DNA of 64,000 nucleotides, taken from the NCBI RefSeq assembly GCF_006345805.1, contig NC_043020.1, positions 6,944,001 through 7,008,000 on the forward strand. Reading direction: 5' to 3'. How positions within the stretch are numbered: position 1 is the stretch's first letter; every line of letters starts with the position of its first letter. This DNA is from Octopus sinensis (Eukaryota). The position numbers and the translations under genes are program-made. The notes beneath the pieces are model-generated. The model searched no databases. It was not told the DNA's origin and was given only the letters and a program-made list of their open reading frames with translations. Shown piece after piece: positions 37,692 to 58,496 of the stretch.

Positions 37692-37728
<37 letters not shown>

Positions 37729-39505
37729 TCTTTCTGGAATTTGTGGAGAAGGGGAGAGTTGATCACATTGACCTGGTACTCATTTCATTGACCCCCAAAA
37801 AGATGAAAGGCAAAGTTGACCTCAGCAGAATTTGAACCCAGAATGTAAAGACGGATGAGAGGCCATGAAGCATATGCCTGACATGCTAACGATTCTGCCA
37901 TCTTGTCGCCTTAATAATAATAATATTAATAATAATAATAATAACAAAGAAATCAGAAGAACCAAACATAAAGGATTGATTGTGTAAAGCAGATTTAGTG
38001 TTTAATGACCTCGTAGATTCAAAAATGGTAAAATGCAGATTCTTCAGAAATATTTTTTTTAAGACATTAAATAACCCCTAAAGCTCAGCTTCATAAAGGA
38101 AGCAACACACATTTTGTTTTGGTGTAAGAGTGTGTTTCGACAACAAACAGATGTTGTCTTTACAGATACGACTTAAAGCTCCATTTCAAAAGAACAAACA
38201 GAATTTCTAGGAACCATACCTAAAGACTCATTCTGGAAAACGATTAACAAATATTCAGACTGCACTCTCTCTCTCCTGGTTCGGATCAAATTCTTGTTAC
38301 TTCATTAAAAAAAAAATAAATAAAATAAAAATAAAAAGAAAGAAAACGGTAATGTTGCCAAAATAGCACAAATATAGAATTTACCAAACTGTCACAGACA
38401 GCATTAGACATTATTCCATGCACCTTAGCTCGGGATCTTCAAGTAATGGGGAAAAGAAAAGCAAGAATTTTCAAAATTCTGAGTCCTCTGAGAAGTGACG
38501 GTGGTAAGTGTTGACGGACAGCAAAAAAATGTGATGGTCAAGAAAGTTGTGATGACACTTAGTAAAGAAGTAATGACAGTCAGCAAAGGGGTGATGACAG
38601 CTGGCAGAGGGGTGATGGTGGTTGGCAAATAAGTGATGACAGCCGGTAAAGTGTTGACGACACCGATCAGTAAAGGGGTGGTGACAATAGCCGGTAAAGC
38701 GGTGACACTGGTCAGTAATGAAATGGTGATGGTTGTTAATGAAGTGATGACGGCCAGTAACTATGCGATAAGTCGGTAAAGGAGTGATGACAATTTGTTA
38801 AATACCAGAGTCTAAATGGCAATGACAGGCTTAAATGGTGATGACAAGCGTGTCAAGAGATGATGGACAAGTCTGTTTAAGATGTGATGACGAGTCTGTT
38901 AAATGATGACAGAAGACGGAGGAGCTGTCATGGCAATTCTAAAATATCACGGGACATGGTTAGGTCAGACCATTCATCTCTCTTTAGCAACATGGAGGGA
39001 TCGTTGGCGCCACGGTTACCACAATACGATGACAGACAGACCATTAGTCATGTCATAGCAAGCAGCAAGAGAAATTGAAAATTTCCAAGGAGAAAAAAAA
39101 CCAAAAAAAAAACATTTCATCATTCGTTGGCAGTGGGGGTGGGCATGGTGAGATTTTTCATTTTCCTTTCAGAGCAAAAATCAATAAAGGAAAAAAAAAA
39201 GGACTCAGAACATAAAGAAAAAGGGAAGGTTAAGGGTGGGGATAGTTCATACATAGTTCTAGTAGTAGCGGTGGTGGTGCTGGTGGTGGTAATAGCCATT
39301 GTGGTGGTTGTAGTAGTGGTAATACTGCAGTGGTGGTGATGGTGGCGAGAGAAATACAAGCAGTAGTAGGGGCTGTGGTAATAGTGTGGAGGTGGTGGTG
39401 GTGGTGGTTGTAATGAAGGTGGCGTAGATGGTAGGTAGGTGGGTGGGTGGGTGGGTAGAGAAACGATTGAACAAGAGGAGCAGGGTGGGTGGGTGGGGGG
39501 TTGTT
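34930..39505 (-). other. Putative long 3' UTR of the PP2A B'' gene
   Basis: Directly follows the stop codon; mostly unique sequence with poly-U/poly-A runs. AATAAA on the minus strand at 34956-34951 is followed by U-rich sequence. The 3' end is inferred only. Confidence 0.4.
36030..37060. repeat. 46-bp minisatellite, about 22 units
   Basis: Unit GCTAGCTCTGACACTATCAC(T/C)GATAATCTGTGGCTAC(G/A)TTATTGAT; one unit is 44 nt. Confidence 0.97.
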
Positions 39506-39665
39506 CTAGAAATGCAGATCCCCGTTCCTGAAGTAATAAGGGTCACAGATATTGGACGTCGTTCTTGGCATCGAAGATCTCTGTCGGAGGAACTCACTGC
39601 CGGGACTAACGAGTTCTTCTTGGATGGAATCTTCGTCGTCAGGCTCAAAGTCGTCTTCGTAATTA
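39506..39665 (-). CDS. PPP2R3A/B: PP2A B'' terminal coding exon: NYEDDFEPDDEDSIQEELVSPGSEFLRQRSSMPRTTSNICDPYYFRNGDLHF*
   Basis: Strong polypyrimidine acceptor (ccttctttctctttccgttctgcag). AT+T restores the frame from the previous exon across a 16.5 kb intron. Acidic EDDFE segment as in B'' C-tails; TAG at 39508-39506. Confidence 0.85.
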
Positions 39666-39912
39666 CTGCAGAACGGAAAGAGAAAGAAGGAGAAGATACG
39701 GTCAGTCATTTTGGCACCAAAGACACAAAGAATATAATTTCAAAAAAAAGGGGTTGAGAGAAATAATGCAAAGTATGAATAAAAGACAAATACAGGGATA
39801 TTAAATACCATACAACATAAATTCTGGATTAATGGTGCCAGTAAAGAAAAGGAGAAGCTTATTGTTTGGAAATAAGGGGACAGATATAAACATGTTTAGT
39901 GTGTATTTAAGG

Positions 39913-40550
39913 CACATGGCTCAGTGGTTAGAGTGCTGAGCTCACAATCATGAGGTAGAGAGTTCGATTCCCGGACTGGGCTGTGTGTTGTGTTCTTGAG
40001 CAAGACACTTTATTTCACATTGCTCCAGTTCACTCAGCTGTAGAAATGAGTTGTGATGTCACAGGTGCCAAGCTGTCTTGGCCCCTTTGCCTTTCCCTAG
40101 GATAACACTGGTGGCGTGGAGATGGGAGGCCAGTATGCATGGGCGACTGCTGGTCTTCCATAAACAACCTTGCTTAGACCTGTGCCTCGGAGGGTAACTT
40201 TCTAGGTGCAATCCCATGGTCATTTATGACCGAAGGGGGTCTTTACTCTTACACACACGAGTTTTGATTCCTAGATTGGGCTCTGTGTTGTATTCTTGAG
40301 CAAGACACTTTATTTCATGTTGCTCCAGTTCACTCAGCTGTAGAAATGAGTTGTGATGTCACTGGTGCCAAGTTGTATCGGCCCCTTTGCCTTTCCCTTT
40401 GATAACATTGGTGGCATGGAGAGGGGGAGGCTGGTATGCATGGGTGACTGCTGGTCTTCCATTAACAACCTTGCTTAAGACCTGTGCTTTGGCAGGTAAC
40501 TTTCTAGGTGCAATCCCAGGATCATTCATGACTGAAAGGGTGTCTTTACT
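39913..40550 (+). mobile_element. Two tandem copies of tRNA-headed SINE family C (minus-strand fragments at about 19295-19690)
   Basis: TGGCTCAGTGG A box and GAGTTCGATTCC B box, then ttgagcaagacactttatttcac.ttgctccagttcactcagctgtagaaatgag. The second unit starts at about 40258. Confidence 0.85.
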
Positions 40551-40579
40551 CTTTTATTGCAGTGATTTTAGAGAAAAAC

Positions 40580-41085
40580 TGTATATACAAGGGATCAGAT
40601 GTGCAAGAAAGAAGACTGCACTGGTATGGTCATGTAATGTGCATGAAGAATGACAATTACATCAAAAGGTGCCAATATTTAACTGTGTAGGGAACATGTG
40701 AAAGGGGAAGACCCAGAAAGACGTGGGACGAAATGGTGAGAAAGGATCTTCAGACGTTGGGGCCTCACAGAGGGGATGACAGAGGACAGATTCCTGGCAG
40801 TTTGCTGTGCTTGAAAAGACCTGTCAAGCTAAATGTGGTTGCCTACATCCCTCTCCAGCCGAGCAGACCTAATCTTACGGGCTTGTGGGTGTTGGTGTCA
40901 CATAAACGTACCCATGCCAGCGCTGCATAAATGCACCCAGTACACTGATTGGCATTAGGAAGGGCATCCAGTGGTAGAAACAATACCAAAACCGACAATG
41001 GGGCCTGGGCAGCTCTTTAGCTGACCAACTCCTGTTAAACCATCCAACCCATGCCTGCATGGAAAAGCAGGTGTTAAATGATGAT
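40580..41085 (+). mobile_element. RTE-clade LINE 3' end (ORF remnant plus 3' UTR)
   Basis: Fragments LHWYGHVM, GTCERGRPRKTWDEMVRKDLQTLG and WQFAVLEKTCQAK*. Followed by the ggcattaggaagggcatccag...ccaacccatgc...tgatgat tail also seen alone elsewhere. Confidence 0.8.
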
Positions 41086-41337
41086 TACACATATTATACA
41101 TATATTACAAAATTATCACAGCTTTAATAAAAAGTATATTGCTCTACCTTTGGTATTCGAGTACTATTATTTCCACCTTGTTTGGCACTTATGTGTGTGT
41201 ATGTAATGTACAATATATGGATTTATATGACGAAAGACCAAGAACTCTGGAGATATGCTGTGACTGCGAAGACCCGACAAATTACGTGAGTTCATGGCTG
41301 TTTCCTGCACCAGCTTCACATAGAAGCCCCAGCCCAT

Positions 41338-41376
<39 letters not shown>

Positions 41377-41833
41377 TGCATTGACAAAAGTCTGCAATTA
41401 AACACAACCAGTGAAAGTGTTGCTATGCAAACAAGCAATATCTGTGTTATCAAAAGGGCCAGACCCCTCCATACCTTTTCCACAACAAAGGGGTTAATAA
41501 GGACCAATGTGCTTCCATAATTGATCCCTAAAGGTTAATTAACAGTTATAGACTTGACTAGTAATGCTCCCTGCCCCCTTTGTCCTTAAATACCTTAACT
41601 TTAGATTAGGGGGACAAAGCATATTGCTTGCCTTCGGCAATGATTTTTAGGGTTCATAACGACTAATGCTAGCAAGGCTTTATGGACGATAGGGAAAGAA
41701 AGAATAAAGCAGTCTGGGGTCCAGCGCCCCTCTGCAGTACCTTGAGCAAGTTCCTCTGTTATAGCAGCCCTTGGCTGACCAGAGTCTTGTGAGTGGATGT
41801 GGAAGACGGAAACTGAAAACCCATCGTGTGTGT

Positions 41834-41874
<41 letters not shown>

Positions 41875-41994
41875 CCTTGTTTTGACAACATAGAGGAAAG
41901 TGGGTCCTCATATCTTGTCATAACTCAGGTGTTTTGGTGGGTGACAGTTGTTTCACACATCTGCTATTTATGTACTTATGTGTTTATTCACTTT

Positions 41995-42196
41995 ACTCTT
42001 TTACTTGTTTCAGTCATTTGACTGTGGCCCATGCTGGAGCACCACCTTTTGTCGAGCAAATCGACCCCAGGACTTATTCTTTTGTAAGCCCAGTACTTAT
42101 TCTATCGGTCTCTTTTGCTGAACCGCTAAGTGACGGGGACGTAAACACACCAGCATCGGTTGTCAAGCAATGCTAGGGGGACAAACACAGACACAA

Positions 42197-42255
<59 letters not shown>

Positions 42256-42800
42256 TACGACGGGCTTCTTTCAGTTTCCGTCTACCAAGTCCACTCACAA
42301 GGCATTGGTCGGCCCAGGGCTATAGTAGAAGACACTTGCCCAAGGTGCCACGCAGTGGGACTGAACCCGGAACCATGTGGTTGGTTAGCAAGCTACTTAC
42401 CACACAGCCACTCCTGCGCTTATATTCTTTATTCTTTTTCTTTTACTTGTTTCAGTTATTTGACTGTGGCCAGGCTGGAGCACCACCTTTAGTCGAGCAA
42501 ATCGACCCAGGACTTATTCTATCGGTCTCTTTTTGCTAAGTTACGGGAACGTAAACACACCAGCATCGGTTATCAAACGATGTTGGGGGGGACAAACACA
42601 GACACACAAACACACGCACGCATATATATACATATATACGACGGGCTTCTTTCAGTTTCCGTCTACCAAATCCACTCACAAGGCTTTGGTCAGCCCGAGG
42701 CTATAGTAGAAGACACTTGCCCAAGGTGCCACGCAGTGGGAATGAACCCGGAACCATGTGGTTGGTAAACAAGCTCCTTAACACACAGCCACTCCACTTA
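41995..42800 (-). mobile_element. Two consecutive SINE family A copies (41995-42419, 42437-42800)
   Basis: Reverse-complement units of the consensus. Confidence 0.9.
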
Positions 42801-42829
42801 TATAAGCTTTCCTTCCTTCCTTCCTTTCG

Positions 42830-44620
42830 AAAATACTACAGTGGGATGTCAAGGGAGATTTAGCTGCTATTTCTAGCAAGTCGAACCAACAACGTGGAGA
42901 CGGCCTTCTCTTTCGCATCCTATCTCGTTTCAGATGGGTGACAAACGAGGTTATTTCCAGTGTTGTTTGTATAATTATGCCATTACTCATTTGCATAGCA
43001 TAAGTCTTCCACCATTTCCTTTAAAAGCACTACAGTGAAATTTGAGGGAGACTTAGCTGCTATTTCTAACCACATAGACAACCTTCCTTTTCTCTGCCTC
43101 ATCATATCTCAGTTATTTTAGACGAATGACAAATGAAATCTGAGAAAGATTTAGCTGCTATTTCGACCAGGTTGAATAACAGTGCAGAAGGGAGAAGCCC
43201 TCTCACTCATCACAGTCATTATTTAAAAGGGTGGATGACAAACAGGGCTATTCACACCACAGCAATTTATGTTTCCATGTGGTTATTCAACCATGCAGCC
43301 TTCCCTCTTTCTTTCTAAAACACTAGTGTGATTCGAGGGAGATTTAGCTGCTATTTTTAGCAAACTGAACCCTCCCTCTTTGAGCTCTCTTTGCTCCATT
43401 TCATCTCAGTTATTTCATCGGGGTCACTAACGAGTTTATTTACTGTAATTTATGTAATTTATGCTACTGTAATTTATGTGCCAAATGGGTATTCAGGCAT
43501 GTAACCTCTCATTCCTTTTTGAAAACACTGCAGGAGTGGCTGTGTGGTAAGTAGCTTGCTAACCAACCACATGGTTGCGGGTTCAGTCCCACTGCGTGGC
43601 ATCTTGGGCAAGTGTCTTCTGCTATAGCCCCGGGCCGACCAATGCCTTGTGAGTGGATTTGGTAGACGGAAACTGAAAGAAGCCCGTCGTATATATGTAT
43701 ATATATATATATGCGTGTGTGTGTTTGTCCCCCCTAGCATTGCTTGACAACCGATGCTGGTGTGTTTACGTCCCCGTCACTTAGCGGTTTGGCAAAAAGA
43801 GACCGATAGAATAAGTACTAAAGGTGGTGCTCCAGCATGGCCGCAGTCAAATGACTGAAACAAGTAAAAGAGTAAAAGAGAAAAGAGAGGGGGACATTCA
43901 AGGGACATTTAACTGTTATTTCTAACAATTTGACCCCCTTTTTAACATCAGTGCTCCATTATTTCAATAGGTGACAAAGTTATGTCCCACAGCTATTATT
44001 TGTGAACCGATATAGTTAGCCTTAAAAACACTGCAGTTGGATTTGAGGAAGAATTAGCTGTTATTTCTAATAAGCTGAATAACAAACACAGAGGGAAGAG
44101 GCTATCTTTTTCATCACAATTCACTTATTTTGGTGGGTGACAAATGAGGTTATTTCACATCACTATTTCTGTACCTACAGCCGTCCATTCTTTTAAAACA
44201 TTACAGTGAAGTGACAGACATTTAGCTGCTATTTCTAACAAGTTGAACAACACAGCAAGGGAGAAAAGCCCTCATCACATTTCAGCTGTTTTGGCGGGTG
44301 ATAAAAGGGATTATTTCGCACTGCTATCATTTAGGTACCTACAACCTTCTATTCTTTTAAAGTACTACAGCAATAGGAGGGAGATTTAGCTGTTATTTTT
44401 ACAAAGTTTAACAGTAATACGAGAGAGATTCAGCTGCTATTTCTAGCAAGTTGAACGACAACAGATGGAAGAGGCTCTGCCCCAACAGTAATACGAGAGA
44501 GATTCAGCTGCTATTTCTAGCAAGTTGAACGACAACAGATGGAAGAGGCTCTGCCCCCTCATCACCAACCAGTTCAGCTATTTCGGTGGGTGACAAACGA
44601 GGTTATTTCACACTCCGGCT
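42830..44620. repeat. Degenerate tandem array, about 10 units of 75-200 bp
   Basis: Core gagatttagctgctatttcta recurs; an exact 74-bp duplication lies at 44410/44484. Confidence 0.8.
43531..43880 (+). mobile_element. SINE family A copy interrupting a degenerate tandem array
   Basis: Colinear with the consensus, with an internal deletion. Confidence 0.9.
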
Positions 44621-45109
44621 ATTTACGTTCCTTGGCTGTTAAGGCCAAACAGAGACACAACCCATCACCCCTCGCTCCCACCCTGCCTAAACTAAATTAT
44701 ACATGTTTGATATCACCTCCGAGGCTCCTCCCCCGCTCTAATTATCCCCACGCGTTATCGAATTATCGCTGTATCTTTTATTGATTCTAAACCGGATTAT
44801 ATTATCTTAGCAATGGGTCGCTTTTCGCCCGTTCGTTTGTTTTTATTCGCTTGGTTTATTTGTTTTCGCTTCGATATTCTTTGCTGGTTTATGTTTAGTT
44901 GCTGACAGCAAATATTGCCCTAATAAATTACTATACTGGCAGAATGAATTACACACACACATTTTAGGTATTAGGAACAGTAGGGGAAACTGTGTGTGTG
45001 TGTGTGCGTTTGTATATATACATACACACACACGTACATGCATTTTTAGTGTGGAGTAAATTATTTTGAAAGTGCACACACATAAAAACATGTCAGTGTG
45101 CAGTATATT

Positions 45110-45130
45110 ATATTATATGTGTGTGTGTGT

Positions 45131-45173
<43 letters not shown>

Positions 45174-45286
45174 TATACACATTTATTTATGTTTATATAT
45201 AGATATATTTATTTATATATGTTTATATATATATACACATACATTTATGCATGTTTAAAAATATATATATATATTTATACATGTTT

Positions 45287-45324
<38 letters not shown>

Positions 45325-45544
45325 CATTTATACATGTTTATATACACATATACACACAAACATTTTTAATACAAAGAAAATAATGATACTCAGTACATAA
45401 ATACAGAGTTAATAATAATAATAACAGTGGAACAACCAGGTGTATATATATGTATCATGTACACACACATGTATGTATGCATCTGTATATATACATAAAT
45501 TCATGTATGTCTCTCTCTGTCATATATATATATATTTGTATGTA

Positions 45545-45619
<75 letters not shown>

Positions 45620-45785
45620 GTATATATTATATATATATATTAATATGTATGTGTGTATATATACATATATATTAATGTGTATGTATACATATATATATAC
45701 ACAAACACAGACAGCAACACGTTTGTACACTGTTCATCTAATGCTGAACCACTTCAAAAGATTTGAAAAATTCCACACACACACA

Positions 45786-45861
<76 letters not shown>

Positions 45862-46159
45862 TATATATATATATACACACACACATATATATATACACAC
45901 AAACACATAAGAGAGTGCATGTGATATCTGAAATTGTAATTATTTCAAAATTATGAAAAGCAAAATCAAATTTATAGCTAAAAACACACACACAGAAGTT
46001 ACACCCCAACCATGCCAAACCCTTCAGTAAATTACAAGTCCCAGTGAAGTGTGCTTATTATTGTGATTTATGGATTAGCGGCAGCAGAAGCAATGGTGAT
46101 AGTTGTGTGTGTGTGTGTGTGCATGAGCATGTGTGTGTGTGTGCATGAGCATGTATGCA

Positions 46160-46196
<37 letters not shown>

Positions 46197-46740
46197 TAAT
46201 AGATATTACTGGTGTTGTGGTTCTCTATTTACATACAACTGGCACTTTAATCATTGTTTTTCAATTACTACCCTATCTATATCTATGTCTGTCACTATCA
46301 TTCTATCTATCTATCTATCTACTTACCTACCTACCTATCTTTATCTATCTGTCTATCTATCTAACTGTCTATCTTTATCTATCTATCTATATTTGTCACT
46401 ATCATTCTATCTACCTATCTATCTATCTCTGTCATTATCATTCTGTCTATCTACTTACCTATCTATATCTATCTATCTATCTATGTCTGTCACTATCATT
46501 CTGTCTATCTATCTATCTATCTACTTACCTATCTATATCTATCACTTCAATTCTGTCTGTCTCTTTTTCTGTCATCCTACCTATCCATTTAGCTACCTAT
46601 CTATCTACCTCTGTATTTATCCATCCATCTGCCCGGCCAACCATTTATGTGTATGTCTATCCTGCTCTCAGCCAGCTATCTACATCTATATAGATATCTA
46701 TCTACTCACCCACCACTCTATCTATCTATATCTGTCCTTC
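45110..46740. repeat. Compound (TA/TG)n and (TATC)n microsatellites
   Basis: Direct reading of the sequence. Confidence 0.93.
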
Positions 46741-47173
46741 CCTGTATCTATTGGCAGAACCATTACAGTAATAGACAAAATGACACTACAGTATCAGCTC
46801 CAGCTCCCTACATTCCAGGTTCAAATCCTAGCAAAATCAATAAAATTAAATACCAAACACACATTTTTGCCAGTACCGCCTGACTGGCCCTCGTGCCGGT
46901 GGCACGTAAAAGCACCCACTACACTCACAGAGTGGTTGGTGTTAGGAAGGGCATCCAGCTGTAGAAATCATGCCAAATCAGAATGGAGTCTGGTGCAGCC
47001 ATCTGGTTCGCCAGACCTCAATCAAATCGCCCAACCCATGCCAGCATGGAAAGCAGACGTTAAACAATGATGAGTTCAGTCCCACCGTGAGGCACCTTGG
47101 ACAAGTGTCTTCTACAGCCTCAGGCCAACCAAAACCTTGTGAGTGAATTTGGTAGATGGAAATTAAAAGAACC

Positions 47174-47214
<41 letters not shown>

Positions 47215-47338
47215 TTAACAATTGAGGAATGGCCTTAATAGGCCATTCGACCCACTAGAAAGAGCAGCCAGGACTCAAACCGCCAAGTAGTAGTAATTCA
47301 GAAATTAGAGAAAATTTAAAAACATTTACCCTAAATCA

Positions 47339-47437
47339 TCTTCAGACAATGCATTGTTTCGGTGTTTTTAATGGCAAACCAGCTTAATTAAATTAAATTA
47401 AGTCAATCCACCAAAGGCTACACCTCGTCGGTAAAGA
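47339..47437 (-). ncRNA. Type I hammerhead ribozyme motif (U4C core variant) on the sense strand of the last PPP2R3 intron
   Basis: TCTTTA-CCGACGA-GGTGT...ACACC-GAAAC-AATGCATT-GTC-TGAAGA: all three stems can pair. Confidence 0.62.
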
Positions 47438-47984
47438 GGCCAGGAGAGACGGATATACATGAGGCATCTGTATCTATGCCCTAGGAATATCTGCCCTAAA
47501 ATTTTCAAAACCATCGTACTCGCGCCAACTTATATTTATTTATATATATTTATGCGTGTTTGTCCCTGCATCAGCACTTGATAATCGGTGCCGATATGTT
47601 TACATCCCCAACAATACGTACTAGGTTTTAATGAGTCCTGGGCATCTATTTGTTCGACTAAAAACCCTTCAAGCTGTTACCCCAGCATGGCCACAGTCAA
47701 ATTACTGAAAGCAGTAAAAGAATACAATGATATATACACTCACACATGGACACACAGTATGTGGGTTATGGGGTCCAATGGTTGTCAGTAGGTTCACGGT
47801 TGAGACCGAGTGCAACAGACACCAGGAAACAAACCAAATCATTACAGAGCACCTCCGCCCAAGCCCACCCCAACTTAACTGTTACCAAAAATGTACAATA
47901 GAACATGATGATGATGAGGAGGAGGGGGGGAAGGAAGCTAGCCATGTGGTGAGGAAGGTGGCTAGGCAGGCAGATGTGTATATA

Positions 47985-48025
<41 letters not shown>

Positions 48026-48586
48026 GTAATAGTGTATAAACAATTTACATATTTACACACGAAAGAGGTGACCTTTGACAGGACACCTTACATGCTAGAA
48101 AGGGCAGTCACAGACCAAACCATGAATAAGAGCAATTTCAAAGGGAATGAAAATAATAAGTATTTTTGTGGTTACCCTCAAACGAGTTTCTGTATCAAAG
48201 TGCAAATAAATGAATTTGCCATCTGCACTTCTTCAGAGAAGGTGCATAAATTAATGCATTATGTGTGTGTGTATTTATTATATATGCGCCCTTTCCAAGC
48301 CTAGTCAGGCTCATGGGCCCGGTTTCCCAGTTTCTGTGGCGTATGTGTTCCCCACCAGCTGGACGGGACGCCAGTCCATCGCAGCGTTACTCAAGAAACA
48401 GGAAGAAAGAGTGAGAGAAAGTTGGGGCAAAAGAGTACAACAGGGGTCGCCAATACCCTTTGCCGGAGCCTCATGGAGCTTTAGGTGTTTTCGCTCAATA
48501 AACACTCACAACGCCCGGTCTGGGAATCGAAATCGCGATCTTCTGACTGCGAGTCCGCTGCCCTAACCACTGGGCCATTGTGCCTC

Positions 48587-48625
<39 letters not shown>

Positions 48626-49919
48626 TGTAAAAAATACAAACTGGGACAAGAACGCAAAACATTTAGAAGACGATACAAAAACACGGACGGGACATTCGAA
48701 GCCTTCAATCTTCAGTCAAGAACCGAATCATCCTCGCAATTTCAGCTGATATATATATGTATATATACATACGAGTCTGCCGTGATGATTCAAAAAACTA
48801 ACACAGACAAACTACCTAAGGGTATATTTCTTTCTCCCTCTGAAAAGATTAAGCTCAGAAATATGATTTTAATAGTTATTTAACTTCACTAAGCTTAACT
48901 GAAACAGCTGCAAGGAATAATGATCGATTTTATGCTGATAATAAACTCTTACTAACCTCTTGCATGATTATAAACCATGGTTTATATATAAACCAATTAT
49001 TTTAAGGATATTAACCTCCCAACAAAAGCATAGGTATTGACCCAGTATTTCCTTGGATGATGTCATCCCTTCAGGAAGCTAATATAACCTCTATTTGAAT
49101 TATATATATACACTCTCAGGGACAAGTGTGGTTTTGTAGTTAAGAAACTCGCTTCCCAACCATATGTTTTCTGGTTCAGTCCCACTGCGTACCACCTTGG
49201 GCAATTGTCTTCTGCTACAGCCCTGGCCACCCAAAACCATGTGAGTGAATTTGGTATATGGAAACTGAAAGAAGCCTGCTATGTGTCTGTGCATGTGTGT
49301 GTAATTTTATATTGATAATATGTGATGATTGTAAACAAGCTTCACCATCACAAAAGTGGGATTGTTTGTTTCCAGTCTTGCATGAAAAACGTGTCTGGTC
49401 GTGAGAAAATGTAACCTTGTTTTGCTTGGAAACAGGTGAAGGTTGGTGACAGGAAGAACATCAAGCTGCAGAAAATTTGCCTCAACAAATTCTGCCCGAC
49501 CCATGCTAGCATGGAAAAGTGGACATCAGATGATGATGATGTATATTATGTGTGTGTAGGTGTGTGTAGTTGATATCATAATAAATGAACCATACCAGGC
49601 CATGTGAAAAGTACCCAGTCCACTCAGTAAAGTGGTTGGCATTAGCAACGTCATCCAGCCATAGCAACCAAGCCAAAACAGACAACCAGAGCCTGTCTGG
49701 CCAGCTCCTGTCAAACTGCCCAACCCCATGCTCGGAATTCAACCGCTGCCAAAGTCAACCTTGAAGCTGGACAAAACGCCACGAAGCATTTTGCCCAGCA
49801 TGTTAACAATTCTGCCAGCTTGCCACCAAAATAGTAATAATAATGAGCACTCAGACCTCTGCCAAGCAACACCAACATCCTATCAGCGATCAGCCAGAGA
49901 TGATTTTTAAAATGAGAAT

Positions 49920-50210
49920 ATCTGAAGTAAACTCAACTGCTCTCACAAATGGGAATACTAAAAATGAACCCAACCACTATCTCAAAAATTAAGTAAAAAA
50001 AAAAAAACAGGAAAAATAATCCAGAAACCTAATCTGGTATCAGATTAATCCCAAAATCTAATCAGTTCGTGCTAGTCCCAGAGCCAAACATCCCTGAAAG
50101 TTTCATCTGAATCCATCCAGTGGTTCTTGAGATATCTTGTACATGGACAAACAAGCAAACGGAAATTAAAACAATACTTCTGCCTTCGCTAAAGCAGAGA
50201 TAATAATAAT
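49920..50210 (+). mobile_element. Possible non-autonomous Helitron/Helentron-like element end
   Basis: aaagtttcatctgaatccatccagtggttcttgagatatc...acaatacttctgccttcgctaaagcagagataat, with a subterminal hairpin. Family assignment is from recalled resemblance only. Confidence 0.3.
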
Positions 50211-50302
50211 ACAGTTTTTCTAAATCAGTGACTGTGGTTGCTGGGAAAAACATTAAATAGATATTTGCAAACAGGTCTCCTTAATCGAAAACCAGTGTTT
50301 AC

Positions 50303-50347
50303 CATACGTTGACGAGAGGCAAAAACCTCGAAACTATAGTCCGTATG
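50303..50347 (+). ncRNA. Minimal type I hammerhead ribozyme motif (C3U core variant)
   Basis: CATACG-TTGACGA-GAGG-caaaaa-CCTC-GAAAC-TATA-GTC-CGTATG: 6-bp stem I, 4-bp stem II, palindromic stem III and a GUC cleavage triplet. Confidence 0.75.
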
Positions 50348-51060
50348 TATCACTTAGGTTTTCGAGAGGGGATGACCTCCCTTTGCAAATACCATAAGGG
50401 CACAGAAAGTGTGTCTAAAGCTAGCTGGAGACGACGATCTCCTGGGGCTAAAAGCTTCAGTAACACCCACCCCCAGTGGCTAGCCATATTCAGATGGCTA
50501 GTACACTTTACGTTAAATAATAATAATGTTTAAGAAAATATTATTATGGAGTTAGGATAGACAGAAGAGACCGTCTGGATTAAAATTAGCTTATAATAGT
50601 GAGTGTTATGGAGAAAATTAGCTTAAGAGTGACTCCACTTTGAATATAAAAAATAGGGCAAATTTTCTGAGAAATTTTATTGGGAAAAAATGTATCTTAT
50701 ATGCAATCAATTATGGTAAGAAAAAAAAGATAGCCTAATATTTTCACACACAACACGTACACAGAACGTGAGAAAGTGTAAAAGAATAACAGACTGGTGC
50801 CAAATATTGTACATTGTTTGAAAGGTTGAGATTTCATAACAGACACAGAATCACTGGAAACCGGATTTCTCACGCAAGGACTTTTGACACTTCCATGTCA
50901 AAACATCTCAAACTTGATATTTTGGTGTCACCCTGTTCCACCACCAATCCCCCCCCCCCTCTGCCCACTCTTTCTCATCCTGAAACTTTTGCTGTGGGAG
51001 ATGATAGTGTTGGTGGCAGTAGTAGTAGTAGTAACAACAGGAAACGGACAAAATGCCACT

Positions 51061-51115
<55 letters not shown>

Positions 51116-51409
51116 TGGGGGGTGCCTAAAAATTCTTGGCTTTAAGAATATTGTAAAAGGCCTTTCTAGTAAAGGCACAAATCCAGAAATTTGGTGTGGG
51201 GGGGGGGACTAGTTGATTACATTGACTGGTACTTAATTTATTGACCCCAAAAGGATGAAAGGCAAAGTGAGGACGGAATGATAGTAGTGGTGTAAATGAT
51301 GATGGCAGTGGTGATCCGAGGGACATGGTTGTAGTACTGGTGGTAATTCCAGTTCAACTCTGCAGCAGGATTTGGCGCCTTGCCATGCCTCCAGATAGAG
51401 TCAGAAGTG

Positions 51410-51690
51410 ATTGTCAGGGAATTTCTACAACTTCACCAGCCCCAACTTCTGGGCCCCTAATTCTTCTAATTGTAATCCCATGGCTTACTCTGTGTGAGGT
51501 GCATTTAAGAAACACACACCCAACTGTTTGACCTGCAACATCAAAGCCAATCTGGTGGCCAAGATCAAAGAGAGATTTTTAAAATCTTCCCAGGTACAAT
51601 AGTGATGAATGCATGTCCCAGGTTCCAGAACCATCCCGAAGCCGTGGTGGAAGCCGAGGGCAACAACTTTGAGTAAATCACAAACTCCCA
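51410..51690 (+). mobile_element. maT/DD37D-like transposase C-terminal remnant
   Basis: FWAPNSSNCNPMAYSV*G resembles WPPNSPDxNPLDYxVWG. ACPRFQNHPEAVVEAEGNNFE* resembles the ACxRFRxRLEAVxxAxG C-terminus. Confidence 0.65.
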
Positions 51691-52619
51691 ACCATTAATC
51701 TTGCGGTGACCTGACAGAATTGTTAGCACGCTGGTTGAAATATTTAGTGTTATTTCGCCTATCACTACATTCTAAGTTCAAATTCCACCGAGGTTGACTT
51801 TGCCTTTCATTTTTTCGGGGTCAATAAATTAAGTACCAGTGAAACATTGGGGTTGATATAATCGACTAGTTCCCCACCCTCCACCCCCCCAAAAAAAATT
51901 TCAGGCCTTGTACCTTAGTAGAAAGGATGTTATTTGATTTCTGGCAGAAATGTTAGCACACAGGGCGAAATGCTTAGCAGTATTTCATTCACGTTCTGAG
52001 TTCAAATTCTGCCAGGGGTCGACTTTGCCTTTTATCCTTTTAAGGTCGATAGATAAAGTACCAATTGAGTACTGGGGTCGATGTAATCAACTTAACTCCT
52101 CCCCCAAAATTTCAGGCCTTGTACCAAAAGTAGAAAAGGATTTTTTTTATTTTTTAAAAAAATACTTTTATTTTTCAATGGAATCTTGTGTTTTCCTTTC
52201 CTTTTATGCCAAGCGTCAAATTGAGCCCAAACACCCCAGGGTAGACCGACCATTATGGGCCCACCGAAACAGTTAAAGGGTGTCTGAAGTTAGACAGTGG
52301 CTAACTAGGAGCTGCCTGTTCTACACCTGTGTAAACTAAGCACTTTAATCAAATGTACCTCTTCACCATGGTACCAGTTTACAGCTAGGTAGATTGGGCA
52401 CACCAATGAACCGTGCCTCTTCCTTTCTCCTGCATGGTGCCTTTTTACATCCAAGTAAACTGAGAACAGCAGTGAATTGTACCTCTTCACCATGGTACCA
52501 GTTTACAGCTAGGTAGACTGGGCACCACAATGAACAATACCTCTTCATTGCATCTATTCCCATAAAACTGCTATGCCCCATTGAATTTGAAAGCTGTTTA
52601 ACAGAGACAAATCAAAATC

Positions 52620-52755
52620 CTGGTAGTGATTCAGATATAAGAGCAAAGTCATCAGCAAAAGGAGCTCCCAGGGGCAGCTCGACTAAATTCTTACGTTATT
52701 GCCTAGTGGACTATGATGAACAGGAGGGGGCTGAGGACTGACCCTTGGTGAACCA
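52620..52755 (-). mobile_element. RTE reverse-transcriptase domain fragment
   Basis: VHQGSVLSPLLFIIV, then after a frameshift CPWELLFADDFALISES (YADD-type motif). Confidence 0.8.
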
Positions 52756-52789
52756 CTACTTATACCCTGAATTCATACATATATTTTAT

Positions 52790-53150
52790 TTGTTTGAGTC
52801 ATTTGTCTGTGGCTATGCTGGAGTACCGCCTTTAGCTGAAGAAATCTACCCCAGGACATTCTTTGTAAGCCTAGTACTTATTCTATCAGTTTCTTTTGCT
52901 GAATCAAAAAGTTACAGGGACGTAAGCACACCAACACCGGTTGTCAAGTGATGAAGGGGCGACAAACACAGACACACAAACATGTACACGATGGGCTTCT
53001 TTCAGTTTCCGTCTTCCAAATCCACTCACAAGACGTTGGTTGGCTCAAGGTTATAGAAGACACTTGCCCAAGGTGTCATGCAGTGTGACTGAACCCGGAA
53101 CCATGTGGTTGGGAAGCAAGCTTCTTATCACACAGCCACGCCTGCGCCTA
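52790..53150 (-). mobile_element. SINE family A copy
   Basis: Diverged reverse-complement unit. Confidence 0.85.
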
Positions 53151-53155
53151 CATAA

Positions 53156-53189
<34 letters not shown>

Positions 53190-53194
53190 CACGT

Positions 53195-53477
53195 GATCAC
53201 ATGACCGACCAGACTATCAGATGTTGCTACACATCGCTGGTCACAATGCGTTTCGCATTGTTTTAGCCTTCAAATGACGCCACCCCGCTGGCTAAGCGAG
53301 CAGGCCAACAGAAGAAAGGGTGGTGAAAGAGTACAGCAGGGGTCGCCACCACCCCCTGCCAGAACCTCGTGGAGCTTTTAGGTGTTTTCGCTCAATGAAC
53401 ACTCACAACGCCCGGTCTGGGAATCGAAACCGCGATCCTACGACCGCGAGTCCGCTGCCCTAACCACTGGGCCATTA
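53195..53477 (-). mobile_element. tRNA-headed SINE family D (copies at 48300-48587 -, headless 2555-2855 +)
   Basis: Head atggcccagtggttagggcagcggactcgcgg...gtttcgattcccagaccgggcg, followed by a non-tRNA body shared between copies. Confidence 0.8.
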
Positions 53478-53504
53478 TATGTATATATAATGAAGTACGG
53501 AAGG

Positions 53505-53760
53505 AGCATGGCTTAGTGGTTAAGGTGTCACATTCACGATTGTGAGATCGTGGGTTCGATTCCCACACCTGTCACTGCATGGTGTTTCTGAACGAAACAC
53601 TTCATTCCACGCTGCTCTGCGATCATTTCGTCACCTGCCTAAAGACACGTCGTGCACCTGTACAGGTAAAGTCGATCTGATGGAGAGAGGGAGTTTATGT
53701 CTACACAAACATCTGATCACTATAAACAAATTATCCGTGTGGTTGTTCGGTAAGAAATTG
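53505..53760 (+). mobile_element. Another tRNA-headed SINE-like element
   Basis: TGGCTTAGTGG A box and GGTTCGATTCC B box followed by a unique body; single copy in the window. Confidence 0.55.
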
Positions 53761-54878
53761 CCAAACCCCCATACGTCGTCTAACGATGGGCTTCTTTCAG
53801 TTTCCGTCTATCAAATCCCCTAATAAGGCTTTGGTCGTCCCTTAGCAAGACACTTTCGATATCTCCTCTCTTCCAGCACAGAAGTTTTAATCACCCCAAG
53901 ATATTTTAAATTAATATTTCCTAACAACCCAAAGGGACGCAACTTCCGTTTAAATGTGCTGGAGTTAATTCCCCTTACAGAATAAATCTCTTCGCAATTA
54001 ACTGACGTGTGATGTGTTTGTTCTTTTTTAATATGTCGTGCCAGCTGAAGAATTAACATCACTGCTTGTAGTTCATCGCTTTTCAAAGAAGCACAATTAT
54101 AAACACACACACAGACACACACACACACACACGCCCAGTAAGGTTCTATTAGATACTGTTAGTCGAATTCAGTCACAAGATTTTGGTTGGCCTAGAGCTA
54201 CAATAAGGTTCCTCACTTATCATCACCGCTTAACGTCTGCTTTCCAGCACTGGCATTGGTTGGATGGTTTGACAGGAGCTGGACAGGTAGAAGGCTGCAC
54301 CAGGCTACTGTATCTGTTTTGCATGGTTTTTACGGATGGATGCCCTAGTGCTTTTTATGTGGAACCAGCACAGGCGAGGTCAGTTTTAGCAGGGTCATTA
54401 CGACTGGATGCCCTTCCTAGCACTAACCATCCTGCAGAGTGGACCAAGTGCTTTGTACGTGGCACCAGCACAGGCGAGGTCAGTTTTGGCAGGGTCTTTA
54501 CCACTGGATGCCCTTCCTAGCATTAACCATCCTGCAGACTAGACCAAGTGCTTTTTACGTGGCACCAGCACAGGTGAGGTCCATTTTGGCAACGTTTCTA
54601 CACCTGGATGCCGTTCCAAATGGCAACCACTTAACAGTGTGGACTGGGTGCTTTTTGCGTGACACCAGAATTGGCAGGGTCACCAAGTAAGTCGCAAGAC
54701 AAGGAATTATGTGAGAGGAGGGAGGGTCATTGGAGGAGGTGATGAAAGGTTATAGAGAGGCAGAAACAGGTGTCTTGCTATAGAGGAGGTTCATGGTTAC
54801 CTGGCCAGAGTAAAAATCCAAATAATGGTTGGTGCCAAGAAAGACATCAGACCTCATAATACAACCTCAATAAGTAAC

Positions 54879-55317
54879 GGATCATTTCGGTTTGAACGGC
54901 AGTTTTTTTTCGAGCGGTGTCATATGAAATTGTCACCCATAATTATGACCCCAGTATCAATCTATTGCATTTCAATTTGTTTTAGGGTTTAGGGTTAGTT
55001 AGGGTTTAGGGTTAGGGGTGGGGGAAGGGTATCTTTTTTCTTCACAAATGTAAATAAACCCAATCTGTTTCTTAAACGAGGGACATTCATACGGCACAAT
55101 GTTTTTTTTTTTTACCTCAATAGACGGTCATTGATTGGTTGAAATTGCAGAAATTGAAGAAAAAAAACAGCAAATATGTTTCAAACTACAGAGTTTTCTC
55201 AAGAAAGCCAAGAGAAAAAGATGTTTTATAAACATATTCTACCAGTATACGAAGTTTAAAATTTTTTAGTTACCTAGAAATTATTTTTAAAAACTGCCGT
55301 TCAAACCGAAAAGATCC
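54879..55317. mobile_element. Second copy of the telomere-repeat MITE, opposite orientation
   Basis: Same TIRs and colinear interior with 13022-13457 in reverse complement; (TTAGGG)-like tract at about 54982-55017. Confidence 0.88.
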
Positions 55318-55518
55318 AATAAGTCTTTTCTAATTGGTACCAATATGACAAAAAAAAAAACCAAAAACAAAAGAAAACATAAAAACAAGGAAATGAAGGC
55401 AACTTTGGACAATGCTGCCGCAGATAAAGAAATTCTGGGAAATGGTCACACCTGCTGGAACAGGATTTCACCACCACATCCCCACAACAAAAACCAGTGA
55501 AAGGCTGGAATATTAAAA

Positions 55519-56130
55519 AAGCATATCTCTAAAATTGTCAAGAAGGCCGAGGGTGTCTTGGCATCACTCAGCAAGACTTTTGTTAGCCGCTCTCCAGCCA
55601 TCTATTTAAAACTGTATACAGCTATGGTACAACCACACTTGGAATTCGCATCATCAGTTTGGAACCCCTATCTTGCTCAGAACATTGACCTCCTGGAATC
55701 TGTCCAGAGACGTGCAACCAAACGCATACCCTCCATCAGACACCTACCATATTCTGAGCGCCTTGTTTCCCTGGGCATGGATTCACTGAAGCTCTGGCGA
55801 CGGACTTGGTAAACACCCACAAAGTTATCAACCACCTCACCAACAACAACACTGAACACCTTTTTGATCTCCATGTGTCTTACACACGTGGACATGCCCA
55901 CAAAGTCAGAAAACAACACAGCTCCCATGACTTTCGGAAACATTTTTTCACGCTCAGAGTTGCTGAAGCATGGAATAAACTGCCTGCGTCAGTTGTTGAC
56001 TGCCATGACACTGCATCCTTTAAGGCCCTCATGCTTTCCGAAATCCGCCGAAACTACACCTGATTATATATACACTTTAGATGAATTGTAGTGCACCTGA
56101 GCACTGTACACAATTATTATTATTATTATT
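55519..56130 (+). mobile_element. 5'-truncated CR1-clade LINE (ORF2 C-terminus, 3' UTR, (ATT)n tail)
   Basis: LKLYTAMVQPHLEFASSVWNPY...LESVQRRATK...YSERL...TRGHAHK...RKHFFTLRVAEAWNKLP, with one frameshift; tail ends at 56130. Confidence 0.92.
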
Positions 56131-56140
56131 AAATACTCAC

Positions 56141-58495: not shown

Positions 58496-58496
<1 letters not shown>

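What the first reader, a model, noticed from the sequence alone, without database searches (positions are those of the whole stretch)
47339..47437. Hammerhead fold on the sense strand of the 16.5-kb PPP2R3 intron
Seen (minus strand): UCUUUA-CCGACGA-GGUGU...about 55 nt...ACACC-GAAAC-AAUGCAUU-GUC-UGAAGA. This gives a 6-bp stem I (one G-U), a 5-bp G-C-closed stem II and a palindromic stem III ACAAUGCAUUGU; the core differs from CUGANGA only by U4C. Known: intronic hammerheads exist in animal genes, and U4 is a conserved core base, so activity may be low. Inference: this motif is transcribed in every PPP2R3 pre-mRNA, so even slow cleavage at 47345/47344 could affect splicing of the long terminal intron.
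Basis: partly seen in the sequence, partly recalled or inferred. Interest (0 to 1): 0.72.

Follow-up and report, generated by a model that had tools for sequence, protein, structure and literature searches.

The report
Hammerhead look-alike in an octopus intron

Summary
The pattern at 47339-47437 (minus strand) is exactly as described: stem I of 6 bp, core CCGACGA (U4C), stem II of 5 bp closing a 54-nt hairpin, GAAA, the palindromic stem III and GUC. It lies in the sense strand of the 16,475-nt last intron of an Octopus PP2A B'' (PPP2R3) gene. It is rare by chance: 0 of 1000 shuffled windows gave a match.

The ribozyme reading is not supported.
- No Rfam hammerhead model reaches E<=10 even on a 126-nt stretch, and two hammerhead covariance models run without filters do not list it.
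- The hammerhead fold is about 4 kcal/mol worse than a plain long hairpin, about 0.1% of the ensemble.
- The motif sits in a 313-bp insertion with 12-bp target-site duplications, nested in the (TA)n tract of an abundant SINE.
- The whole 3.4-kb block is absent at the orthologous site of O. bimaculoides.
- No second copy was found in 136 kb of octopus DNA.

Verdict: a passenger of a nested retroposon. It is either a decayed atypical hammerhead or a coincidence, with no evidence of a host function. Interest is low.

The parts
47432..47437 (-). Candidate stem I, 5' strand UCUUUA
   Evidence: pairs with 47339-47344 (6 bp, one G-U); descriptor hit.
47425..47431 (-). Candidate 5' core box CCGACGA (CUGANGA with U4C; C4 at 47430)
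   Evidence: In the minimum-free-energy fold, GACGA pairs with UUGUC.
47361..47424 (-). Candidate helix II: GGUGU/ACACC (5 bp, G10.1-C11.1), then a 6x6 internal loop and a 54-nt imperfect hairpin (10 bp with 6 G-U pairs, a 1x1 mismatch, 7 bp, 6-nt loop)
   Evidence: The long extension is atypical: canonical metazoan type-I hammerheads have a 4-bp helix II (PMC4209133); the 6-nt CAAAAA loop is seen in the Rfam HH9 consensus and in the relic at 50291-50363.
47345..47360 (-). GAA (G12-A14), 12-nt palindrome ACAAUGCAUUGU (helix III: 4 bp plus UGCA loop, or a 12-bp duplex in a dimer), and C17 at 47345
   Evidence: GUC triplet; predicted cleavage between 47345 and 47344.
47339..47344 (-). Candidate stem I, 3' strand UGAAGA
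47218..47530 (.). 313-bp insertion that carries the motif (40% G+C; no long ORF, no poly(A), no terminal inverted repeats, T4/T5 runs on both strands); the motif lies 93 nt from one end and 121 nt from the other
   Evidence: joining the flanks restores a collinear SINE. No other copy in the window, in L001 or in L002.
47206..47217 (.). Target-site duplication, copy 1: TATATTTATTTA
   Evidence: identical 12/12 to 47531-47542.
47531..47542 (.). Target-site duplication, copy 2: TATATTTATTTA
47074..47739 (+). Host element: a 5'-truncated, diverged copy (76% identical to the consensus of 7 others) of an abundant ~350-bp SINE with an internal (TA)n(TG)n microsatellite; the insertion sits in that microsatellite
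   Evidence: Self-BLAST finds 17 matches to its left part in the window; alignments.
39666..56140 (-). Last coding intron of the PP2A B'' (PPP2R3) gene, 16,475 nt, GT..AG, phase 2
47072..50515 (.). 3.44-kb block of nested repeats, holding both hammerhead-like motifs; O. bimaculoides has only about 62 nt, including a (TA)n tract, at this site
   Evidence: L001; no N run in that interval.
50291..50363 (+). Genuine HH9-like type-I hammerhead relic, antisense to PPP2R3: core UUGACGA (C3U, 50309-50315), helix II GAGG/CCUC with loop CAAAAA, helix III AC-UAUA-GU, GUC at 50339-50341. It served here as the positive control
   Evidence: Rfam RF02275: 39.3 bits, model 1-77/77, E=2.2e-9. Own model R1 with filters off: 33.4 bits, E=7.9e-7, the only significant hit in the window.

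Best explanation
The motif is a hammerhead-shaped but non-canonical stretch brought into the intron by a 313-bp retroposed insertion, which landed in the (TA)n tract of an older SINE copy. It is transcribed with the PPP2R3 pre-mRNA only as a passenger.

In that RNA it should fold mainly as one long imperfect hairpin, with the 5' 'core' paired to the 3' strand of 'stem III' and C17. With U4C, no recognisable loop-loop contact and an unfavourable hammerhead fold, it should cleave very slowly or not at all. It has no host function.

On its origin I cannot decide. I put a decayed or aberrant mobile-element hammerhead at about 45% and a coincidence helped by the hairpin's own complementarity at about 40%.

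Shown: the pattern, the insertion with its duplications, the nesting, absence in O. bimaculoides, failure of the family models, and the competing fold. Inferred: lack of catalysis and lack of function.
For: - Insertion anatomy and a restored empty site.
- Absent at the orthologous site of O. bimaculoides.
- No hammerhead family match at any stringency, and none with the filter-free models R1 and R2. The positive control at 50291-50363 scores 39.3, 33.4 and 83.4 bits (it is one of the two sequences R2 was built from).
- The minimum-free-energy fold is not a hammerhead. The hammerhead-constrained ensemble is 4.2 kcal/mol higher, about 0.1%.
- The whole insert is not unusually structured: z = -1.1 and -0.8 on the two strands.
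- No paralogue in 136 kb of octopus DNA.
- Hammerhead surveys discard motifs that fall into no sequence family, or judge candidates not conserved in close relatives to be likely false positives (PMC4209133 Methods; PMC3088659 Discussion).
- From my own knowledge: hammerhead cleavage of an intron does not prevent splicing unless it is fast (Dye et al. 2006 Mol Cell; Fong et al. 2009 NSMB).
Against: - The full pattern is rare by chance: 0 of 1000 shuffles.
- Features outside my descriptor fit real hammerheads: G10.1-C11.1, C15.2-G16.2, a GUC triplet, a palindromic helix III, and 6-bp and 5-bp helices each followed by an internal loop (PMC4209133).
- U4C is a known natural variant that lowers activity in vitro but still supports viroid infectivity (PMC3088659).
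- The carrier resembles metazoan non-LTR retrozymes: about 300 bp, low G+C, duplications longer than 4 bp (PMC7229834). Its (TA)n target also fits the insertion bias of Penelope-like elements (PMC8557442).
- Real hammerhead-bearing elements occur in this same intron.
- Nearest-neighbour energies ignore the tertiary structure of the hammerhead core.
- No cleavage assay was possible.
Confidence: 0.75

Rival explanations
1. It is a working, if slow, variant hammerhead (U4C core, extended helix II) belonging to an unrecognised Octopus family of small hammerhead-bearing retroelements, retrozyme-like or a 5'-truncated 3' end of a Penelope-like element. The ribozyme serves the element's own RNA processing, and this copy happens to lie in the sense strand of an intron.
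For: - Rare by chance.
- 313 bp, 40% G+C, a 12-bp target-site duplication and a (TA)n target, compared with PMC7229834 and PMC8557442.
- The motif lies 121 nt from one end, as hammerheads of Penelope-like elements lie near the 3' end (PMC8557442).
- Those hammerheads vary greatly in sequence within a genome, and the atypical D. virilis variant escaped the authors' minimal descriptor (PMC4209133).
- U4C is tolerated in a viroid (PMC3088659).
- Cephalopod genomes hold Penelope elements and Rfam Hammerhead_1 hits (PMC6962438).
- A canonical relic lies 2.9 kb away.
Against: - No second copy in 136 kb and no tandem arrangement.
- No reverse-transcriptase or GIY-YIG coding remnant next to it.
- No covariance-model signal.
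- The hammerhead fold is disfavoured.
- A 54-nt helix II is outside the helix II sizes described for animal hammerheads in the papers read here (4 bp canonical, 6-8 bp in Penelope-like elements; PMC4209133).
- C4 lies in a CpG. A T-to-C change is not the fast mutational direction, so a young copy probably inherited C4 from its source (inference).
Confidence: 0.12
2. It is a host-exapted intronic ribozyme. Slow co-transcriptional self-cleavage of the terminal intron modulates PPP2R3 splicing or 3'-end formation.
For: - Sense orientation in a long terminal intron.
- Conserved intronic type-I hammerheads exist in amniote genes such as RECK, CTCL and DTNB (PMC6155905).
Against: - Not conserved: the whole block is absent in O. 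bimaculoides, where the protein differs at only 4 of the last 260 residues.
- It is nested in two layers of mobile elements.
- It has a core mutation and an unfavourable fold.
- Slow intronic ribozyme cleavage does not disturb splicing in reporter studies (my own knowledge, as cited above).
Confidence: 0.03
3. The roughly 100-nt imperfect hairpin matters as double-stranded RNA, for example as an ADAR or small-RNA substrate, rather than as a ribozyme.
For: - The hairpin is the minimum-free-energy fold, z = -2.0.
- 6 of 10 pairs of its distal stem are G-U, so the stem forms only in the minus-strand RNA.
Against: - The z-score is modest: 10 of 200 shuffles fold as well.
- Counting A-C mismatches in the internal loops, the G-U to A-C ratio is 7:3, which is not significant.
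- No Rfam microRNA match in the motif.
- It is lineage-specific.
Confidence: 0.05

Closest known systems
Canonical metazoan type-I hammerheads (Rfam Hammerhead_1 RF00163 and HH9 RF02275), as carried by non-LTR retrozymes
   Same: - Type-I topology with a 6-bp helix I.
- G10.1-C11.1, GAAA, C15.2-G16.2 and GUC.
- A palindromic helix III.
- A carrier of about 300 bp with low G+C and target-site duplications longer than 4 bp (PMC4209133, PMC7229834).
   Different: - U4C core.
- Helix II closes a 54-nt hairpin instead of the 6-nt CAAAAA-type loop seen in the HH9 consensus and the nearby relic.
- No UAC/GUA-type helix I loop.
- No covariance-model score.
- A solo copy, not a tandem array.
- The real example in this window, 50291-50363, shows what a member looks like.
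Minimal hammerheads in the terminal repeats of Penelope-like elements
   Same: - Highly variable sequence within a genome; atypical variants can escape the standard descriptor.
- Mostly found as single motifs, probably from truncated elements.
- Palindromic 15.2-16.2 and G10.1-C11.1.
- Low or no activity as monomers.
- Insertion into microsatellites (PMC4209133, PMC8557442).
   Different: - Those have almost no helix III, a 7-8-bp helix II with an unpaired base after A9, and a 4-5-bp helix I; this motif has none of these.
- No reverse-transcriptase or endonuclease remnant nearby.
Conserved intronic hammerheads of amniotes (HH9 in RECK, HH10 in CTCL)
   Same: A sense-strand type-I motif inside an intron of a protein-coding gene (PMC6155905).
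   Different: Those are conserved across whole classes of animals and have an intact core. This one is absent in a congeneric species and carries a core change.
Natural U4C hammerhead variant of a viroid
   Same: The same core substitution; it is reported to lower activity in vitro yet to remain biologically sufficient (PMC3088659, citing its ref. 30).
   Different: PMC3088659 suggests that contacts outside the active site offset such core changes; no such contact can be recognised here.
Discontinuous rodent hammerhead with a very large loop (the mouse hammerhead noted in PMC3088659)
   Same: It shows that a hammerhead can tolerate a long insertion in one helix.
   Different: There the core is canonical, and from my own knowledge the insertion is in helix I and the site is conserved among rodents.

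Membership tests
Hammerhead ribozyme (any type) | Three helices around a junction in the order I - CUGANGA - II - GAAA - III - H - I | tested here: met
   6-bp helix I, 5-bp helix II, 4-bp (6-bp palindromic) helix III, with correct junction strand lengths.
Hammerhead ribozyme (any type) | Invariant 5' core box C3 U4 G5 A6 N7 G8 A9 | tested here: not met
   CCGACGA, so U4 is C. The variant is known in one viroid with reduced activity (PMC3088659).
Hammerhead ribozyme (any type) | G12 A13 A14, the A15.1-U16.1 pair, and H17 (not G) at the cleavage site | tested here: met
   GAA, A-U, then GUC.
Hammerhead ribozyme (any type) | Significant score against the curated covariance models of clan CL00010 (the Rfam hammerhead clan) | tested here: not met
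   No hit at gathering score, at E<=10 on 801 nt or at E<=10 on 126 nt. It is not among the hits with E<=10 for models R1 and R2 with filters off. The positive control scored 39.3 and 33.4 bits. The 54-nt insertion is penalised by these models, so this is not proof of non-homology.
Hammerhead ribozyme (any type) | Loop-loop tertiary contact between helices I and II, needed for activity at cellular Mg2+ | tested here: inconclusive
   There is no canonical loop 2 or helix I bulge sequence, in contrast. Internal loops do follow helix I (6 bp) and helix II (5 bp), but no contact can be inferred from sequence.
Hammerhead ribozyme (any type) | The hammerhead secondary structure is a populated fold | tested here: not met
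   the minimum-free-energy fold is a continuous hairpin; hammerhead-constrained folds make up about 0.1% of the ensemble (4.2 kcal/mol higher). Tertiary energy is not modelled.
Hammerhead ribozyme (any type) | Site-specific self-cleavage giving 2',3'-cyclic phosphate and 5'-OH ends | not testable with these tools
   Needs an in vitro transcription and cleavage assay, or mapping of RNA ends.
Metazoan non-LTR retrozyme | Unit of about 170-400 bp, low G+C, target-site duplications longer than 4 bp when present | tested here: met
   313 bp, 39.9% G+C, 12-bp duplication, compared with PMC7229834.
Metazoan non-LTR retrozyme | Head-to-tail tandem copies, each with a canonical type-I hammerhead | tested here: not met
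   No tandem repeat with a period above 2 nt in 47000-51500, a single copy and a non-canonical motif.
Metazoan non-LTR retrozyme | Multi-copy family in the genome, expressed as circular RNA | tested here: inconclusive
   No second copy in 136 kb. No octopus genome or transcriptome could be searched by DNA. Two metagenome scans found nothing.
Penelope-like element (5'-truncated 3' end) | Continuity with a reverse transcriptase / GIY-YIG open reading frame, or with a terminal repeat of a known element | tested here: inconclusive
   No such ORF in or next to the insert, but a 313-bp truncated copy would not carry one. No element library was available.
Penelope-like element (5'-truncated 3' end) | Insertion bias for microsatellites such as (TA)n | tested here: met
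   The insert lies in a (TA)n tract (PMC8557442). Other endonucleases also prefer TA-rich targets.
Conserved (exapted) intronic hammerhead | Presence and conservation at the orthologous intron position in related species | tested here: not met
   Absent from the O. bimaculoides ortholog. DNA for O. vulgaris and O. sinensis was not obtainable because the gene range exceeds 200 kb.

The most novel reading that the evidence does not exclude
The 313-bp insertion is one copy of an undescribed Octopus family of small retroelements whose hammerhead has a U4C core and a long branched helix II and is still active. Sense-strand copies in introns would then nick host pre-mRNAs.
Probability: 0.08. Interest if true: 0.5.

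Novelty: not a real feature. Interest (0 to 1): 0.15.

Why it matters
As it stands, little. The sequence pattern is real, but nothing supports a working or conserved ribozyme, and hammerhead-like motifs carried by mobile elements are a known feature of animal genomes.

Two points have some practical value.
- The window does hold a genuine HH9-like hammerhead relic at 50291-50363 (plus strand), and O. sinensis holds another weaker one. Canonical type-I hammerhead elements therefore occur in Octopus.
- Rfam's speed filters lost a 39-bit hammerhead in both the 64-kb and the 701-nt scans. A 'no Rfam hit' for short ribozymes in long windows should therefore not be trusted without a filter-free check.

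If the improbable active-family reading were true, it would add a core-variant hammerhead class and a way for mobile elements to cut host introns.

Tried and rejected
- **Rfam scans.** The search at gathering score on the whole window and the search at E<=10 on 801 nt found no hammerhead. I first read this as a plain negative. It proved partly a filter effect, because the true relic at 50291-50363 was also lost in the 64-kb and 701-nt scans and appeared only in an 81-nt scan. I therefore repeated the candidate on 126 nt and with filter-free models; it was still negative.
- **Paralogues of the 313-bp insert.** BLASTN with word size 7 and nhmmer found none in the window, L001 or L002. Exact-pattern scans of the metagenome collection with the 3' half and with a degenerate 5' half found none.
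- **Protein route to paralogues.** Rejected: the insert's ORFs are at most 40 aa, and a canonical CUGA core would put a stop codon in the longest one.
- **Orthologous intron of O. vulgaris and O. sinensis.** The gene models span more than 200 kb, so no DNA was returned. Only O. bimaculoides was usable.
- **Sampling more octopus DNA through a mariner transposase hit.** This gave only 20.7 kb.
- **SINE or small-RNA origin of the insert.** No tRNA was found, there was no Rfam family above chance, and T4/T5 runs on both strands argue against a polymerase III SINE. A MITE was rejected because there are no terminal inverted repeats and the duplication is 12 bp.
- **Homology between the insert and the region of the true hammerhead.** None found.
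- **Model building.** MAFFT misaligned the HH9 consensus with the octopus relic, so model R1 was built from the consensus alone.
- **Marginal covariance-model hits.** The hit at 34528-34617 sits inside an inverted repeat whose arms match perfectly over at least 34 nt and is chance. The hit at 31225-31290 (16.4 bits, E=0.055) was left undecided.
- **First shuffle script.** It timed out and gave no result; it was rewritten.

Full report
**1. The observation**

- UCUUUA (47437-47432)
- CCGACGA (47431-47425)
- GGUGU (47424-47420)
- a 54-nt stretch (47419-47366)
- ACACC (47365-47361)
- GAA (47360-47358)
- the 12-nt palindrome ACAAUGCAUUGU (47357-47346)
- C (47345)
- UGAAGA (47344-47339)

In hammerhead numbering this is a type-I layout with several typical features:
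- a 6-bp helix I with one G-U pair;
- a 5-bp helix II closed by G10.1-C11.1;
- A15.1-U16.1 and C15.2-G16.2;
- a GUC triplet, with the scissile bond at 47345/47344.

The only core departure is U4C.

A descriptor of my own set at the stringency of this hit asked for:
- at most 1 core mismatch;
- helix I of 6 bp with at most 1 G-U pair;
- helix II of 5 Watson-Crick pairs with a loop of 3-70 nt;
- helix III of at least 4 bp.

It returns this site as the only match on either strand of the window. None of 1000 dinucleotide-preserving shuffles produced a match. A looser descriptor gives 0.003 per shuffled window and a very loose one gives 0.078. My rough analytic estimate is about 1e-5 per 64-kb window, or a few tenths of an occurrence per 2.7-Gb genome. 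So the pattern is real and is not expected by chance in a single window. It would be unremarkable only if very many windows were screened.

**2. The gene context**

Stop-to-stop ORFs on the minus strand contain the last exons of a PP2A regulatory subunit B'' (PPP2R3) gene. A 183-residue join of these exons finds PPP2R3 proteins throughout animals. With the length window widened, it finds an Octopus cluster at 99% identity. That cluster holds O. vulgaris, O. sinensis and O. bimaculoides proteins. The translated window exons match the C-terminal sequences of the O. vulgaris and O. sinensis proteins. Among the last 260 residues printed there, the O. bimaculoides protein differs at four positions.

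The intron that holds the motif runs from GTGAGT at 56140 to the AG at 39667-39666, which is 16,475 nt in phase 2. The stop codon is at 39508-39506. A spliced transcript of a relative joins the two exons (P0044). The predicted cleavage site is 8.8 kb from the donor and 7.7 kb from the acceptor.

**3. What the motif sits in**

Self-comparison shows that 47074-47217 and 47556-47739 are the two halves of an abundant SINE of about 350 bp, whose left half alone has 17 further matches in the window. The SINE has an internal (TA)n(TG)n microsatellite.

In this copy the halves are separated by 313 bp (47218-47530) that occur nowhere else in the window. The extra DNA is flanked by a perfect 12-bp direct repeat, TATATTTATTTA (47206-47217 and 47531-47542). 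Removing the insert and one repeat restores a SINE that aligns collinearly with seven other copies through the microsatellite.

So the motif belongs to an insertion flanked by target-site duplications and nested in an older, diverged SINE, which is 76% identical to the consensus of the others.

The insert has these properties:
- 40% G+C;
- no ORF longer than 40 aa;
- no poly(A) and no terminal inverted repeats;
- no tRNA or other Rfam family;
- T4/T5 runs on both strands, which argues against a polymerase III SINE.

It is best described as an unclassified non-autonomous or 5'-truncated retroposon. Folded whole, neither strand is unusually stable (z = -1.1 and -0.8).

**4. The orthologous site**

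The O. bimaculoides gene was retrievable (L001). The window is 82-91% identical to it in collinear intron segments. Window 51023-50516 aligns to L001 34983-35492, and window 46863-46015 aligns to L001 35919-36710.

A direct alignment of L001 with the joined window flanks is collinear. It shows that 47072-50515 (3.44 kb) is represented in O. bimaculoides by only about 62 nt, including a (TA)n run, with no assembly gap there. The block holds the host SINE, the 313-bp insert and further repeats.

Whether this reflects insertions in one lineage or a deletion in the other, the motif is not a conserved part of this intron. The O. vulgaris and O. sinensis loci could not be fetched because the gene range exceeds 200 kb.

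**5. Is it a hammerhead? Family tests and a positive control**

Rfam gave no hammerhead match at gathering score on the window or at E<=10 on 801 nt.

While widening my descriptor I found a second hit at 50304-50346 on the plus strand. In an 81-nt scan Rfam assigns 50291-50363 to Hammerhead_HH9 over the full model, with 39.3 bits and E=2.2e-9. It has these features:
- the helix I internal loop (UUAC) of the HH9 consensus;
- a 6-bp proximal helix I;
- a 4-bp helix II capped by CAAAAA;
- a 2-bp helix III with the palindromic loop UAUA;
- GUC, and a core of UUGACGA (C3U).

The helix lengths and the palindromic loop 3 are the canonical animal type-I architecture described in PMC4209133. Rfam's filters had lost this hit in the 64-kb and 701-nt scans.

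I therefore repeated the candidate on 126 nt and again found no hammerhead family at E<=10. I then built a covariance model from the HH9 consensus (R1) and ran it over the whole window with filters off. The relic scores 33.4 bits (E=7.9e-7) and is the only significant hit. A second model built from the two octopus hits (R2) gives the same result.

The candidate therefore shares nothing with canonical hammerheads beyond the minimal core and helices. These models do penalise a 54-nt insertion in loop 2, so the result excludes membership of the canonical family rather than all hammerhead ancestry.

**6. Folding**

The minimum-free-energy structure of the motif is one long imperfect hairpin. In it, G5-A9 of the 'core' pair with the 3' strand of 'stem III' plus C17 (GACGA with UUGUC), and helix III does not form (z = -2.0, with 10 of 200 shuffles as good). 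Forcing the hammerhead pairs and an unpaired core costs 4.2 kcal/mol of ensemble energy, which leaves about 0.1% of the ensemble.

This complementarity also means that some of the coincidences needed for a chance hammerhead are not independent. GUC is the complement of G5-A6-C7. The same thing is seen at 34528-34617, where an exact CUGAUGA lies in an inverted repeat whose arms match perfectly over at least 34 nt.

**7. Origin: relic or coincidence**

For a mobile-element hammerhead origin:
- The pattern is statistically rare.
- Features outside my descriptor are typical of real hammerheads (G10.1-C11.1, C15.2-G16.2, GUC, a palindromic helix III; PMC4209133).
- Helices I and II are each followed by an internal loop at the canonical distance.
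- The carrier is about 300 bp, has low G+C and has a long target-site duplication, like animal non-LTR retrozymes (PMC7229834).
- It inserted into a (TA)n tract, a preferred target of some Penelope-like elements, whose hammerheads lie near the 3' end (PMC8557442) and vary greatly in sequence within a genome (PMC4209133).
- Cephalopods carry Penelope elements and Hammerhead_1 hits (PMC6962438).
- A canonical relic lies in the same block, and another weak one lies in O. sinensis (L002 8208-8285, 17.8 bits, core UUGAUAA).

Against that origin:
- No family could be shown in 136 kb, and there is no tandem arrangement.
- There is no covariance-model signal.
- The 54-nt helix II is outside the helix II sizes described for animal hammerheads in the papers read here.
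- The field's practice is to discard motifs that fall into no family, or to judge candidates not conserved in close relatives as likely false positives (PMC4209133, PMC3088659).

I put a relic at about 45% and coincidence at about 40%. The remainder covers the active or otherwise functional readings.

**8. What it does**

Whatever its origin, the evidence points to a passenger.
- U4C lowers activity, though one viroid tolerates it (PMC3088659).
- No tertiary contact can be recognised, and the active fold is a minor species.
- The site is not conserved.
- From my own knowledge, slow hammerhead cleavage inside an intron does not prevent splicing because the exons stay tethered to the polymerase; only very fast ribozymes do (Dye et al. 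2006; Fong et al. 2009).

**9. Verdict**

The claimed ribozyme is probably not a real functional feature, and interest is low.

The useful by-products are the genuine HH9-like relic at 50291-50363 (antisense to the gene, core C3U) and the demonstration that Rfam's filters can lose short ribozymes in long scans.

Noticed in passing
window 50291-50363 (+): A genuine HH9-like type-I hammerhead relic in the same intron, antisense to PPP2R3. Rfam RF02275 gives 39.3 bits over the full model (E=2.2e-9). Core UUGACGA (C3U), loop 2 CAAAAA, palindromic loop 3 UAUA, GUC at 50339-50341. It has no other copy in the window, L001 or L002. It lies at the edge of the 3.44-kb block that O. bimaculoides lacks.
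   Followed up: yes
window scans (vs 62): Rfam's speed filters lost the 39-bit hammerhead in both the 64-kb gathering scan and a 701-nt E-value scan. It appeared only when 81 nt were searched, or with a filter-free custom model.
   Followed up: yes
L002 8208-8285 (-) (O. sinensis, CM016866.1): A weaker HH9-like hit of 17.8 bits (E about 0.02) with core UUGAUAA. This is U3 together with A8, the covariation reported for some hammerheads of Penelope-like elements in PMC4209133.
   Followed up: partly
window 47074-47739 and 17 further matches to its left part in the self-BLAST of the window (e.g. 6429-6782, 3621-3974, 8147-8479, 20556-20940, 29058-29388, 29453-29811, 42078-42366, 43581-43877, 58925-59255): A very abundant SINE of about 350 bp with an internal (TA)n(TG)n microsatellite. 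These tracts and other (TA)n runs in 47-49 kb seem to be repeated targets of nested insertions.
   Followed up: partly
window about 34570-34650: An inverted repeat whose arms match perfectly over at least 34 nt. It contains an exact CTGATGAG, which gives a chance 14.4-bit hammerhead-model hit at 34528-34617 (-). It may be a foldback or MITE-like element.
   Followed up: partly
window 31225-31290 (-): A marginal hammerhead-model hit (16.4 bits, E=0.055) with an exact CUGAUGA, a CAAACA loop and GAAA, but poor helices. Relic or chance was not decided.
   Followed up: no
window 17908-18936 (-) and 63648-63998 (+): A broken mariner/Mos1-type transposase at 17908-18936 (Pfam Transposase_1 E=2.8e-24; HTH_48). 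A separate ORF at 63648-63998 gives a weak, sub-threshold DDE_3 match (E=3.8e-4). The first is read in pieces because of frame breaks.
   Followed up: partly
window 53509-53566 (+): A tRNA-like Rfam hit just above gathering score (30.5 bits against 29). ARAGORN finds no tRNA, so it is probably the head of a tRNA-derived SINE.
   Followed up: no
window 46255-46750; 58100-58520; 62610-63460: Long simple repeats: a (TATC)n-type array next to the motif region, a GAT/GAA-rich tract that reads as poly-Asp/Glu, and a minisatellite whose translation repeats every 8 residues (about 24 nt).
   Followed up: no
window 39666-56140 vs L001 about 32100-40360: The terminal intron is about twice as long in the window's species (16.5 kb) as in O. 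bimaculoides (roughly 8.2 kb including assembly gaps). At least part of the difference is the repeat block at 47072-50515.
   Followed up: partly
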